A DNA stretch of 64,000 bases, taken from assembly GCA_033442325.1 (NCBI GenBank), contig JAWQFM010000005.1:890107-954106 (forward strand), read 5' to 3'. Shown here one piece after another: positions 30,174 through 45,765 of this stretch (within the stretch, counting starts at the first letter, position 1; every line of letters starts with the position of its first letter). The notes under the pieces were generated by a model. The model ran no database searches. It saw only the letters and a program-made list of their open reading frames with translations, and was not told where the DNA came from. The DNA comes from Salpingoeca rosetta. Its lineage: Eukaryota > Protista > Choanoflagellata. The translations under genes were made by a program, and so were the position numbers.

Positions 30174-33100
30174 ATGCCGCTCCCCAAGGAGCTCGGCAAC
30201 TTTGCCAAATCGGGGCTCTTGCCCTCGTTCACAGGCGGCTTGCAATTTGACGCCCCAACTGTGCCAATCGACGTGCTCCACCTCTACACATGGATTGGTC
30301 TCTTCGTCATCCCGCTCAGCATATCCTTTGTACGTGCTCAGGGAAGCTCAAATGGCTGGAGACGTGGTGGAGATTGATGCATCGCATGCAAGGCATGGTT
30401 GTAACTAACCTTGCCACAGTGCATCGCCACCGTGTGTTTTGCTGTCTTATCATTGTTCTCATTGTTGAATTTGGTGATCACGCGTTCATCCGTTACTGCG
30501 TGCCTGCGCTCCTACATGGTTGGCGATCGCATTGCCAGGCCTACTTCCATGACCTCTCCCTCGCGGCAAAGCTGGGCTACTCCTTTGCCCTTTCGGCCTT
30601 GTTCGTGCTGGTACAAGTCATCAACGCAGAACTGCACAAGGTGAGAGGGTGTGTATGCGCGTGTATGTGCGGTTTTGTTGGTTGTCTTGGTTGTCGCCCA
30701 GATTGGTGCACGCTCTCTCTGCTGTCGTCTCACCACCACCAACTCCCATGACAACACCACACACACACACACACACACACACACACACACACACACACAC
30801 AACGCCGCACATACACACACACACACACACATGTGCACACGCACCTGCGCACACATCTGTAAACGGGCGACCCTGGTGCTGTGCAGACGTTTGATGAGAA
30901 GGAGCCACGCCTACCGGAGCGGCCACCACGTGCCATTGACAGCGCGGGCACCCTGTCCCCCATCGACGAAGAGCCCACCGCTGACGATGCTGCTGCTGCT
31001 GCTGCCGCGCGTGCCAGCACACCGGCGTCGCGCGCAGGACACCGCGGCAACAATGACGCAAATACCACTACCAACAGCAGCGGCAACACCGCCAGCAACC
31101 CACCTGGACCGTCGTCGACATCATCACCAGCGTCATCAGCAACAGCAACAGCGGTGCCCGCGGCACTGCGTCACCTGCTGCGCAACCCAACGGCGTACGA
31201 CCCCATTGGCGAGCCAACCCACATGAGCTTTGCCGAGCTGAAGCAGAGCGACCAGCTCTACAACCGCCCGGGCTCGTTTATTGTTGGCGGTCCCATCGAC
31301 CCCATGTCTCTCAACTTCCCAGCAGAGGACACGCAGCGGTGTGTGTGTGTGGGGGGGGGGAAGCAAGCGCACGAGAGTGAGAGAGCGCGAGAGCGTGTGC
31401 GTGTGAGGGTGTGGGAAGGAAAGGCGAGCGTATGGGGGGGGGGAGAGAGAGAGAGAGAGAGAGAGAGAGAGAGAGAGAGAGAGAGAGAGAGAGAGAGCGT
31501 GTGCGTACGTATGTGTGTGTGTGTGTGTGTGTGTGTGTGTGTGTGTGTGTGTGTGTGTGCGTGTGCCTGTGTTGGGTAACCAACCACGCCTGAGAGATTG
31601 CTGCCATTGCTCTTGTGGTCGAGCCGTGACGACCCTGCTCTCAAACAGCACCAATGCAACCTCACCCCTTTGCTTCATACCAACCACATCCTCAGCTGGC
31701 TTCACGGTCCTATGACGCGCGGGGATGCTGCCGACATCCTCAACGCCAGCCCATACACAGGTGACGCACGCACACATGTGGCGCTGTGCAAGTGCTTGTT
31801 GCTCTTGCGCTCATTACTTCTAATACAGCCTTTCACCCAAATGGTGGCTGCTGATTGTTGTGTTCTCGTGGCTGATGTGTTGCTGCCTGCTGTTTGCGTT
31901 GCCTGCTGCTTTCCTCACTCCTTGTCGCTCCCAACATGCATACACTCGCACACACGCACGCACATCAGACTGCTTCCTGTTTCGTGAGAGCATCAGCCAG
32001 ACGGGCTCGCTCGTCTTCTCGTACAGGTCGGGGCCACGCTTCAGCACGAGAAACTGCCCTTCCACATGGCTCCATGCACATTTACACACACGCACACACA
32101 TACGTTTACACACACACACACACACACGCGCGCGCGCGCTTGCGTTTGTCGCTCACATGTCCCCCGCGCCCTTCTCCCTGTGTGTATGACTGCAGGAGCG
32201 GCGATCGCGTGATCCACAGCATCATCGGGCACCGGTTCGACGGCTACTTGGTCAAGCACGTCATGTGCTCATCGTACGTCCTCTGTTCCCACGCCGTTCA
32301 CGTCATCACTCGACGCTGCTGCTGCTGCTGCTGCTGCTGCTGCTGCTGTACTTTCGTTGCGTTGGTGCCATCCCCACACGCCGCCTTGAACCCATCACTC
32401 ATGCAGCGCGTGCTTTATACCACACACACTCAACACACATACACACACAACTCAACTTGCACGCACACACACACACAAACACACATACACACACAAACAC
32501 AAATACAAATACAAACACACAAACACACATACACACACACAACTCAACATACATACACACACACACACACAACTCAACATACACACACACACTGCAGGCT
32601 CGGGCAAGTGGTTGGGGTGCTGTTTGACGGTCACACAACGCCGTTTGTCATCACACCCGTTTTTGCCGACGAGGACTTGCGGGCAGCGCAGGTTGCACTG
32701 CACGTACGTCCCGCGCATATGCACGTGTGTGTGTGTGTGGTTGTGTGTGTATGTGTTAGCTTCTCTGTTCACAATTATCTTTGCATGTGTGTGTGTGTGC
32801 GTGCGTGTGTGCGTGTGTGCGTGTGCTCCACACCTGGTTGCGATGCCACGCGAATGCACTGGTGTCATGTTCACTGCGTGTGCTGTGTATCCCGTCGTTC
32901 CCTCAACTGCAGAACGAGCGTGAGGGCGCACAGAAGGGAGCAACGGCATCGGCTGACACCACATTCCTGTAAGACCGCCAATCAGCACACAAACTCACAC
33001 ACCCTTACACGCGCGTACTCATCACGCCATCACCGCCTGCCAACTTTGAAACGCTCATATTTCTCATCACTTGTCACATTGTGTGCACTCATTCCCTTCC

Positions 33101-45100: not shown

Positions 45101-45765
45101 CCAATGGCAGCGCGCAGGCAGATGGGCACACGGAAGCCAGCAGCACCCAGAACCACGGTGACAGCGCAGCCACTGATGCCGAGGCTGTTGGGAACGAAGG
45201 CACGCAGATGCCTGGCATTTATGACTTTTGTCTTCACGACGAAGACGTGTACGACCAGTGCTCTGAGCCCGCGACAGCCTCCAAGGAGAGCGAAGAGGCA
45301 AAGGAGGAGCAAGACGAAGACGAAGTCGAAGTTAACGAAGCGCAAAAGGATGCGGTGACTCAGCCGCCGTTCTTGTACAGCGAGGAGGAATTGTATGAGG
45401 ATGTGGGTGACCCACGAGCAGGATCTACCGCGAAACAACAGACTCGAGCAGAGCAGCAGAGGTCGCGGAATGTTGTTGATCTGGTCCACGACGATATGTA
45501 TGAGATGTTGGAGGGGGAAACGAGGACGAACACGGCCTGCGAGGACGTGAGTGTTGGCGGCGTTGGGATTGGTGAAGGCGACGGCGATGCTGTTGCGGAG
45601 ACTTGCCTGAGAGGCGTGATGGACGTGACGGCCACCAACACGCGAGGCGTTGGCGCGCCCACGAACGAAGCCACACCATCCAAGGCGTCATCCACCGATG
45701 AGAACAGCAGCGCTGCAGACGAGAGCATTCTGCATTCGTCGCTGCCACAAGCTAGCCGGGTATAA
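30174..45765 (+). CDS. PCNX: Pecanex family multipass membrane protein containing SH2 domains (multi-exon; final exon 40140-45765)
   Basis: Pecanex N-terminus ([15 protein letters not shown]…[15 protein letters not shown]; [13 protein letters not shown]|TFDEKE). TM core ([13 protein letters not shown]; SAQYALLK; [14 protein letters not shown]). Pecanex_C region ([15 protein letters not shown]…IWGS…HA; [19 protein letters not shown]; NNLNSLFY; [29 protein letters not shown]; [12 protein letters not shown]; [15 protein letters not shown]; ERGSIQNAK…LRNLI…[12 protein letters not shown]). A single gene is inferred because the N- and C-terminal Pecanex parts flank the intervening exons. Confidence 0.88.
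31697..32660 (+). other. SH2 domain 1 within Pecanex (spread over 4 exons)
   Basis: Spliced translation [21 protein letters not shown]|[20 protein letters not shown]|[26 protein letters not shown]|LGQVVGVL matches the SH2 pattern W-x-HG-x-x-x-R-x-x-A-x-x-x-L…FLVRES…V-x-H. Both pTyr-pocket Arg residues are present. Confidence 0.85.
36190..36265. repeat. Intronic 14-bp tandem repeat (GCTTGTGCGTGTTT)x~5
   Basis: Seen directly. Confidence 0.8.

What the first reader, a model, noticed from the sequence alone, without database searches (positions are those of the whole stretch)
30174..45765. Pecanex with SH2 domains inserted in its first large loop: possible phosphotyrosine-responsive Pecanex
Seen: the Pecanex N-terminal TM hairpin (30174-30900) and the TM core plus Pecanex_C region (about 41300-44730) bracket exons encoding a clear SH2 domain (WLHG…TRGDA…FLFRES). 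Established: animal Pecanex is an ER multipass protein needed for Notch signalling in Drosophila, and this loop is long and low-complexity with no SH2 domain. Choanoflagellates are known for lineage-specific SH2 domain combinations. Inference: a Pecanex wired into tyrosine-kinase signalling in a unicellular relative of animals, which would also imply that this loop faces the cytosol.
Basis: partly seen in the sequence, partly recalled or inferred. Interest (0 to 1): 0.8.

Follow-up and report, generated by a model that had tools for sequence, protein, structure and literature searches.

The report
Pecanex with SH2 in its loop
This choanoflagellate-type gene encodes the multipass membrane protein Pecanex with a canonical phosphotyrosine-binding SH2 domain built into its first large loop, a layout shared with three related choanoflagellate sequences but not with the animal or acanthoecid Pecanex examined, which suggests that Pecanex is coupled to tyrosine-kinase signalling in this lineage.

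Summary
A 21-exon, all GT-AG, 9045-nt reading frame (3014 aa) runs from the ATG at 30174 to the stop at 45763-45765. It encodes the Pecanex N-terminal two-helix hairpin, a roughly 1470-aa loop, the transmembrane core and Pecanex_C (Pfam E 4e-93).

Exons 4-7 (31696-32703) encode one canonical SH2 domain. It scores 54 bits against an SH2 profile I built and 98.6% by hhalign. It is 37% identical to the Pfam-validated SH2 of the Choanoeca perplexa Pecanex, and the phosphotyrosine-pocket residues are kept.

A second, divergent SH2-like module lies at 37784-38524 (84% by hhalign) and lacks the key arginine. A third "FLVR" segment (35656-36876) is not supported.

The same hairpin-SH2-loop-core order occurs in three other sources:
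- a complete C. perplexa transcript;
- a Choanoeca-like metagenome contig;
- the Monosiga brevicollis genome, where the gene is annotated as two models.

It is absent from two acanthoecid Pecanex transcripts and from all listed animal Pecanex proteins.

RNA-like runs hold about the exon share of words. I found no paper describing this architecture. It is a new variant of a known family and of moderate interest.

The parts
30174..30329 (+). Exon 1: start codon and first transmembrane helix of the Pecanex N-terminal hairpin
   Evidence: tblastn with P0002 residues 3-57. Gapless alignment to choanoflagellate and animal Pecanex N-termini. Donor GTACGT.
30539..30640 (+). Exon 2: second transmembrane helix of the hairpin
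   Evidence: tblastn with P0002 residues 47-85. The alignment runs across both exon junctions. Hydropathy peaks at aa 30-48 and 59-77.
30887..31338 (+). Exon 3: conserved post-hairpin motif (FDEKEP) followed by a low-complexity linker; ends in phase 2
   Evidence: The motif is shared with P0002 and P0004. Best codon-usage score in the assigned frame.
31696..32703 (+). Exons 4-7 (31696-31760, 31969-32026, 32196-32273, 32598-32703): canonical SH2 domain, aa about 237-325
   Evidence: blastp to the C. perplexa SH2: 37% identity over 84 aa, E 1e-13, spanning all four exons. Local SH2 HMM 54.2 bits. hhalign 98.6%. Arg alphaA2, Arg betaB5 and His betaD4 are present.
32913..33245 (+). Exons 8-9 (32913-32968, 33190-33245): tentative linker exons needed to keep the frame
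   Evidence: This is the only GT-AG chain found that joins exon 7 to exon 10 in frame. Codon score is good for exon 8 and marginal for exon 9. No homology support.
33567..33713 (+). Exon 10: conserved loop motif shared with C. perplexa and M. brevicollis Pecanex loops
   Evidence: tblastn with P0002 residues 414-439 and with the M. brevicollis loop hits 33626-33703.
33931..34646 (+). Exons 11-13 (33931-34061, 34255-34407, 34610-34646): loop, including an Asp-rich stretch
   Evidence: Phase-consistent GT-AG chain. Best codon score in the assigned frame.
35656..36876 (+). Exons 14-16 (35656-35787, 36437-36537, 36820-36876): loop segment with SH2-like motifs ([16 protein letters not shown]) that is not supported as an SH2 domain
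   Evidence: The SH2 HMM gives no score above shuffles. hhalign 2.5%. The exons are in frame with coding codon usage.
37784..38524 (+). Exons 17-19 (37784-37958, 38165-38298, 38447-38524): divergent SH2-like module, aa about 690-757, lacking the betaB5 arginine
   Evidence: SH2 HMM 15.1 bits against a best of 4.9 in 2000 shuffles. hhalign 84%, E 7e-6, with Thr at the Arg betaB5 column. Donors GTGAGT, GTAAGT, GTACGC.
38721..39865 (+). Exon 20: acidic, Ser-rich low-complexity part of the loop
   Evidence: Open frame joined in phase to exons 19 and 21.
40140..45765 (+). Exon 21: rest of the loop, Pecanex transmembrane core (about 41400-43140), Pecanex_C (44047-44742), acidic tail and stop codon (45763-45765)
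   Evidence: Pfam Pecanex_C E 4.4e-93. 37-57% identity to Pecanex proteins over the core. Hydropathy peaks in the core.

Best explanation
The stretch is one gene for a Pecanex-family multipass membrane protein of about 3014 aa. Its first large loop, after the N-terminal two-helix hairpin, contains a canonical SH2 domain. Further along the loop there is a second, degenerate SH2-like module.

The hairpin puts the N-terminus and the loop on the same side of the membrane, and SH2 domains work in the cytosol. The loop is therefore cytosolic (inferred).

The canonical SH2 keeps the phosphotyrosine-pocket residues in all four choanoflagellate sequences that have it. I therefore infer that it docks Pecanex onto tyrosine-phosphorylated partners, or onto phosphotyrosines in its own loop. 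This would couple the still unknown membrane function of Pecanex (ER-resident in Drosophila) to tyrosine-kinase signalling.

Shown here: the gene architecture, the SH2 identity, and conservation among clade-1-type craspedid choanoflagellates. Inferred: a single mRNA in this organism, the cytosolic topology, and phosphotyrosine binding.
For: - Pecanex_C, E 4.4e-93.
- 434 Pecanex homologues; the core is 37-57% identical.
- The N-terminal hairpin aligns without gaps to animal and choanoflagellate Pecanex across the exon 1/2 and 2/3 junctions.
- 21 exons, 20 GT-AG introns, one stop codon.
- 20 of 20 small exons score best in the imposed frame.
- SH2 number 1: E 1e-13 to the C. perplexa SH2, 54.2 bits on an SH2 HMM built without P0002, hhalign 98.6%.
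- Members of the HMM training set are Pfam SH2 proteins.
- P0002 is a complete C. perplexa transcript ORF with the hairpin, an SH2 at residues 170-233 (Pfam E 2e-9) and Pecanex_C. Its SH2 matches solved SH2 structures.
- P0002 residues 1-2262 are collinear on a Choanoeca-like genomic contig.
- The M. brevicollis locus has hairpin, SH2 exons, loop motif, zinc finger and core in the same order.
- Pocket residues are conserved in all four sequences.
- RNA-like runs hold all words of the big exon but only 0.18-0.20 of the intron-rich stretch 31250-37249. My exon model predicts 0.14.
Against: - There is no read-level or cDNA evidence from this organism.
- Exons 8-9 rest only on frame consistency.
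- Pfam's own SH2 model could not be run on the spliced product because it has no reference.
- Exon 3 and exon 21 are frame-compatible, so an isoform skipping all the SH2 exons cannot be excluded.
- Phosphotyrosine binding and membrane localisation are untested.
- The run kinds were guesses by the tool.
Confidence: 0.8

Rival explanations
1. The SH2 exons belong to a separate nested transcript, or are skipped in the main Pecanex mRNA, so the fusion protein is rare or absent in this organism.
For: No direct read evidence was obtained. Exon 3 ends in phase 2 and exon 21 starts with one base, so skipping exons 4-20 would keep the frame. M. brevicollis annotators split the locus into two models.
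Against: There is no stop, start or frame break along the 21-exon chain, and the imposed frames match codon usage in 20 of 20 exons. The C. perplexa transcript is a single complete ORF with the hairpin, SH2 and core, and a related genome shows the same collinear order. The M. brevicollis split coincides with a run of N in the assembly. RNA-like runs hold slightly more, not less, than the exon share expected from the full model.
Confidence: 0.07
2. The fusion protein is real, but the SH2 domain no longer reads phosphotyrosine. It serves as a structural or phospho-independent interaction module.
For: The second SH2-like module has lost the betaB5 arginine, so SH2 decay does occur in this loop. 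The SH2 C-terminal half (alphaB region) of domain 1 is divergent, and the HMM alignment ends at model position 95.
Against: Arg alphaA2, Arg betaB5 (FLFRES) and His betaD4 are kept in the window, in C. perplexa, in the Choanoeca-like contig and in M. brevicollis, despite only about 37% overall identity.
Confidence: 0.12

Closest known systems
Animal Pecanex (Drosophila pcx; vertebrate PCNX1-4)
   Same: N-terminal two-helix hairpin, long low-complexity loop, multipass core and Pecanex_C. The core is 37-38% identical. Drosophila pcx is reported as an ER-resident protein needed for maternal Notch signalling (PMC9645253).
   Different: No animal Pecanex among the 120 listed carries PF00017. The loop here is about 1470 aa, against about 820 aa in mouse PCNX1, and it holds an SH2 plus an SH2-like module.
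Choanoeca perplexa Pecanex (EukProt EP00045_P014502, P0002)
   Same: Same order: hairpin, post-hairpin motif, SH2, conserved loop motif, core, Pecanex_C. The SH2 is 37% identical and the core 45%.
   Different: It has a single SH2 and a ZZ-type zinc finger in the loop. The window protein has no zinc finger, has an extra degenerate SH2-like module, and has a longer acidic loop.
Monosiga brevicollis MONBRDRAFT_26272 plus the 744-aa model upstream of it
   Same: Hairpin exon, SH2 exons with pocket residues, loop motif, zinc finger and Pecanex core lie collinear on one strand.
   Different: It is annotated as two genes across an assembly gap, so public records do not show the SH2 and Pecanex_C in one protein. 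Its SH2 is more divergent (HMM 10.4 bits for the N-terminal half).
Acanthoecid Pecanex (Didymoeca costata P0004, Stephanoeca diplocostata P0065)
   Same: Full-length Pecanex with the hairpin, a long loop and zinc finger(s) of ZZ type.
   Different: No SH2 by Pfam or by my SH2 HMM.

Membership tests
Pecanex (PCNX) family | Pecanex_C domain (PF05041) | tested here: met
   E 4.4e-93, 311 bits, profile positions 1-226 of 228.
Pecanex (PCNX) family | Homologous multipass transmembrane core upstream of Pecanex_C | tested here: met
   phmmer and tblastn to animal and choanoflagellate Pecanex, 37-64% identity over about 800 aa. Hydropathy peaks fall at matching positions.
Pecanex (PCNX) family | N-terminal two-helix hairpin with the conserved GG..FD / HLY.W and LHK.FD motifs | tested here: met
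   The spliced exons 1-3 align to P0002 (E 5e-27) and to hemichordate, sponge, coral and amphioxus Pecanex (E 6e-12 to 8e-9).
Pecanex (PCNX) family | ER residency and a role in Notch-type signalling | not testable with these tools
   Known for Drosophila pcx (PMC9645253). No data for choanoflagellates.
SH2 domain (PF00017), exons 4-7 | Profile match over the domain | tested here: met
   54.2 bits on an HMM built from 79 SH2 stretches of Pfam-type SH2 proteins. hhalign 98.6%, E 5e-16. E 1e-13 to a Pfam-validated orthologous SH2. Pfam's own HMM was not run on the spliced product, which has no reference.
SH2 domain (PF00017), exons 4-7 | Phosphotyrosine-pocket residues Arg alphaA2, Arg betaB5 (FLxR) and His betaD4 | tested here: met
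   These residues are aligned in the HMM output for the window, the Choanoeca-like contig and M. brevicollis and in the blastp alignment to C. perplexa.
SH2 domain (PF00017), exons 4-7 | Binding of phosphotyrosine peptides | not testable with these tools
   Needs recombinant protein.
SH2 domain, exons 17-19 (aa about 690-757) | Profile match and Arg betaB5 | tested here: inconclusive
   15.1 bits on the C-terminal half against at most 4.9 in 2000 shuffles. hhalign 84%. The Arg betaB5 column holds Thr, so this defining residue is not met.
SH2 domain, exons 14-16 (aa about 533-630) | Profile match | tested here: not met
   HMM score at most -0.7 bits, within the range of shuffles. hhalign 2.5%. 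Only short motifs ([16 protein letters not shown]) fall on the right model columns.

The most novel reading that the evidence does not exclude
In craspedid choanoflagellates, Pecanex is a membrane-anchored phosphotyrosine reader. Its cytosolic loop acts as a signalling hub (SH2, degenerate SH2, or ZZ finger in relatives) that recruits tyrosine-phosphorylated receptors or kinases to the ER membrane. ER homeostasis would thereby respond to tyrosine-kinase signalling in the closest unicellular relatives of animals. If so, the featureless animal loop would be a stripped-down descendant or counterpart of a regulated docking region.
Probability: 0.25. Interest if true: 0.7.

Novelty: new variant of a known kind. 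Interest (0 to 1): 0.52.

Why it matters
Pecanex is conserved from choanoflagellates to humans, yet its molecular activity is unknown and no structure is solved. An SH2 domain, and zinc fingers in relatives, inside its first loop argues that the loop and the N-terminus are cytosolic. It also suggests a concrete set of partners, namely tyrosine-phosphorylated proteins, that could be pulled down in a genetically tractable choanoflagellate.

The finding also adds a multipass membrane protein to the unusually diverse SH2 architectures of choanoflagellates: 123 SH2 proteins combined with 53 other domains in M. brevicollis (PMC4342544).

I found no paper that mentions this combination. In M. brevicollis it is hidden by a split gene model.

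Tried and rejected
- Local scripts on the closed machine did read the whole window file, these places included. This happened as a local BLAST subject and as intron background for codon statistics.
- **Word-index protein searches were blank.** I tried exon 3, hoping for spliced fragments from this organism, and P0002 residues 1-450, hoping for N-terminal fragments from other species.
- **Pfam on single exons** gave nothing because the pieces are too short.
- **Spliced product not handed to tools.** I did not type the spliced protein into Pfam, PDB or structure tools, because it has no reference. Pfam's SH2 model and AlphaFold were therefore not applied to the window's own SH2 regions. I used a locally built SH2 HMM and hhalign instead.
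- **Rejected: three SH2 domains.** The middle FLVR segment fails profile tests.
- **Rejected: 32913-32968 alone as the link** between exons 7 and 10, because the phase is wrong.
- **The closest core homologue** (P0001, on contig L002) is an N-terminally cut ORF on a short AT-rich genomic contig. It says nothing about the loop.
- **The organism is coded.** Its run census fits a laboratory choanoflagellate, but I did not establish its name.
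Full report
**What is there**

The + strand between 30174 and 45765 carries one long gene. The large open frame 39676-45765 contains Pecanex_C (PF05041, E 4.4e-93). A database search with its core found 434 Pecanex proteins at 37-57% identity.

Working from the sequence, I built a model of 21 exons joined by 20 GT-AG introns. It totals 9045 nt and 3014 aa, with a single stop at 45763-45765. The exons are:

| Exon | Coordinates | Exon | Coordinates |
|---|---|---|---|
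| 1 | 30174-30329 | 12 | 34255-34407 |
| 2 | 30539-30640 | 13 | 34610-34646 |
| 3 | 30887-31338 | 14 | 35656-35787 |
| 4 | 31696-31760 | 15 | 36437-36537 |
| 5 | 31969-32026 | 16 | 36820-36876 |
| 6 | 32196-32273 | 17 | 37784-37958 |
| 7 | 32598-32703 | 18 | 38165-38298 |
| 8 | 32913-32968 | 19 | 38447-38524 |
| 9 | 33190-33245 | 20 | 38721-39865 |
| 10 | 33567-33713 | 21 | 40140-45765 |
| 11 | 33931-34061 | | |

I scored codon usage with a model trained on the transmembrane core. All 20 small exons score best in the frame imposed by the chain from the ATG. All but exon 9 exceed the 99th percentile of intron pieces. Exons 8 and 9 rest on frame consistency alone and are tentative.

**Pecanex identity of both ends**

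The spliced exons 1-3 align without gaps to three groups of Pecanex N-termini:
- Choanoeca perplexa, E 5e-27;
- the acanthoecids Didymoeca costata and Stephanoeca diplocostata;
- a hemichordate, a sponge, a coral and amphioxus, E 6e-12 to 8e-9.

The alignments run across both exon junctions. Hydropathy shows two helices at aa 30-48 and 59-77, then a loop of about 1470 aa, then the multipass core. Mouse PCNX1 has the same layout with a loop of about 820 aa.

**The SH2 domain**

Exons 4-7 give aa about 237-325. This stretch aligns over all four exons to the SH2 of the C. perplexa Pecanex (37% identity over 84 aa, E 1e-13). That orthologous SH2 is itself validated by Pfam (PF00017, E 2e-9 in the whole protein and 1.4e-10 for the excised region) and matches solved SH2 structures such as HSH2D, GADS, SHP2 and p85.

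The spliced product has no reference, so I could not give it to Pfam. Instead I built an SH2 HMM from 79 SH2 stretches of proteins returned by the representative search. I left out the orthologue, and I spot-checked members as Pfam SH2 proteins.
- The window's domain scores 54.2 bits.
- hhalign gives 98.6%, E 5e-16. Four control loop segments give at most 0.3%.

Arg alphaA2, Arg betaB5 (in FLFRES) and His betaD4 are present.

**The other SH2-like segments**

- **aa about 690-757 (exons 17-19).** It scores 15.1 bits on the C-terminal half of the HMM, against a maximum of 4.9 in 2000 shuffles. hhalign gives 84%, E 7e-6. Thr stands where Arg betaB5 should be. I read this as a degenerate SH2-like module.
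- **aa 533-630 (exons 14-16).** It contains TRNEAQRL and GLFLVRKV on the right model columns. However, it scores no better than shuffles, and hhalign gives 2.5%. It is not supported as an SH2 domain.

**One gene or two?**

Read-level evidence is missing.
- Local scripts on the closed machine did read the whole window file, including those places.

The indirect evidence is consistent with one gene.

1. The frame is unbroken and matches codon usage.
2. Runs that behave like RNA hold all sampled words of the big exon but only 0.18-0.20 of the intron-rich stretch. My exon model predicts 0.14. This shows that exons there are transcribed and most intron sequence is not. It is too coarse to prove each junction, and the run kinds were guesses by the tool.
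3. The architecture is conserved in three other sources.
   - P0002 is a complete Trinity ORF of C. perplexa. It has the hairpin, an SH2 at residues 170-233, a loop motif, a ZZ-type finger, the core and Pecanex_C.
   - P0002 is not an assembly chimera. Its residues 1-2262 are collinear on an 11.8-kb metagenome contig of a Choanoeca-like organism, at L003 3682-11581. An SH2 exon on that contig scores 49 bits.
   - In M. brevicollis, the locus around MONBRDRAFT_26272 has a 744-aa model upstream of the core. That model begins with the hairpin and contains SH2 exons, the loop motif and the zinc finger, all on one strand. The split coincides with a run of N.
4. The loop motif of exon 10 (33626-33703) is shared with both species. 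This ties the middle of the window's loop to the same protein.

**Distribution**

The SH2 is present in four sequences: the window, C. perplexa, the Choanoeca-like contig and M. brevicollis. All are craspedids, the window's placement being inferred from similarity.

It is absent from the full-length transcripts of two acanthoecids, by Pfam and by my HMM. It is absent from every animal Pecanex among the 120 listed hits. A library-wide phmmer search with the C. perplexa SH2 and loop found only ordinary SH2 proteins, plus the fragments from the Choanoeca-like contig.

The insertion therefore looks lineage-specific. The sampling is thin, because two word-index searches for fragments were blank.

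**How it probably works**

The two-helix hairpin places the N-terminus and the loop on the same side of the membrane. An SH2 domain, and ZZ-type zinc fingers in the same loop of relatives, argue that this side is the cytosol. This is an inference.

The pocket residues are conserved across sequences that are only about 37% identical. That argues for retained phosphotyrosine binding.

The most likely role is docking of Pecanex to tyrosine-phosphorylated partners, or to phosphotyrosines in its own loop, which holds 22 tyrosines. This would link its unknown membrane function to tyrosine-kinase signalling. Drosophila pcx is ER-resident, is needed for maternal Notch signalling, and its loss enlarges the ER (PMC9645253).

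Choanoflagellates have very diverse SH2 architectures: 123 SH2 proteins combined with 53 other domains in M. brevicollis (PMC4342544).

**Novelty**

I found no paper that links Pecanex with SH2 or with choanoflagellates in this sense. No Pecanex structure is solved.

The domain pair is visible in precomputed Pfam tables for the C. perplexa protein, so it is not invisible to databases. I rate it a new variant of a known family and of moderate interest.

Noticed in passing
L001 4733-8845 and 10001-14002: The M. brevicollis Pecanex appears to be split into two annotated gene models: a 744-aa model with the hairpin, SH2 and loop, and MONBRDRAFT_26272 with the core. A run of N lies near L001 5250-5400. 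The zinc-finger exon (9170-9265) lies between the two models.
   Followed up: partly
P0002 859-888; P0004 185-216 and 1121-1151; P0065 1341-1371; L001 9170-9265: A ZZ-type zinc finger (C..C ... YRC..C.FDLC..C) sits in the Pecanex loop of Choanoeca, Monosiga, Didymoeca and Stephanoeca. It is absent from the window protein and from mouse PCNX1.
   Followed up: partly
window 33626-33703: A short loop motif (C..-rich helix-like stretch ending ..AR..Y..NA) is conserved between the window, C. perplexa (residues 414-439) and M. brevicollis. Its function is unknown.
   Followed up: partly
window 31338 and 40140: Exon 3 ends in phase 2 and exon 21 starts with one base. Skipping exons 4-20 would therefore keep the frame and give an SH2-less, animal-like Pecanex. 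I have no evidence that this isoform exists.
   Followed up: no
window 27582-28866, minus strand: The upstream neighbour is an acyl-CoA dehydrogenase gene (Acyl-CoA_dh_N E 6e-17, Acyl-CoA_dh_M E 8e-6). In M. brevicollis and the Choanoeca-like contig, the upstream neighbour of Pecanex is instead a Peptidase_M24 gene on the opposite strand.
   Followed up: partly
window 30750-38160, most introns: Nearly every intron of the gene carries long CA/GT or GA microsatellites. These create many spurious Cys/Val/His/Thr-rich open frames on both strands.
   Followed up: no
L002 (Logan contig, 5334 nt): The closest core homologue (P0001, 57-64% identical) lies on an AT-rich genomic contig from another organism. 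Its called start sits inside an exon preceded by intron-like sequence, so its loop is unknown.
   Followed up: partly
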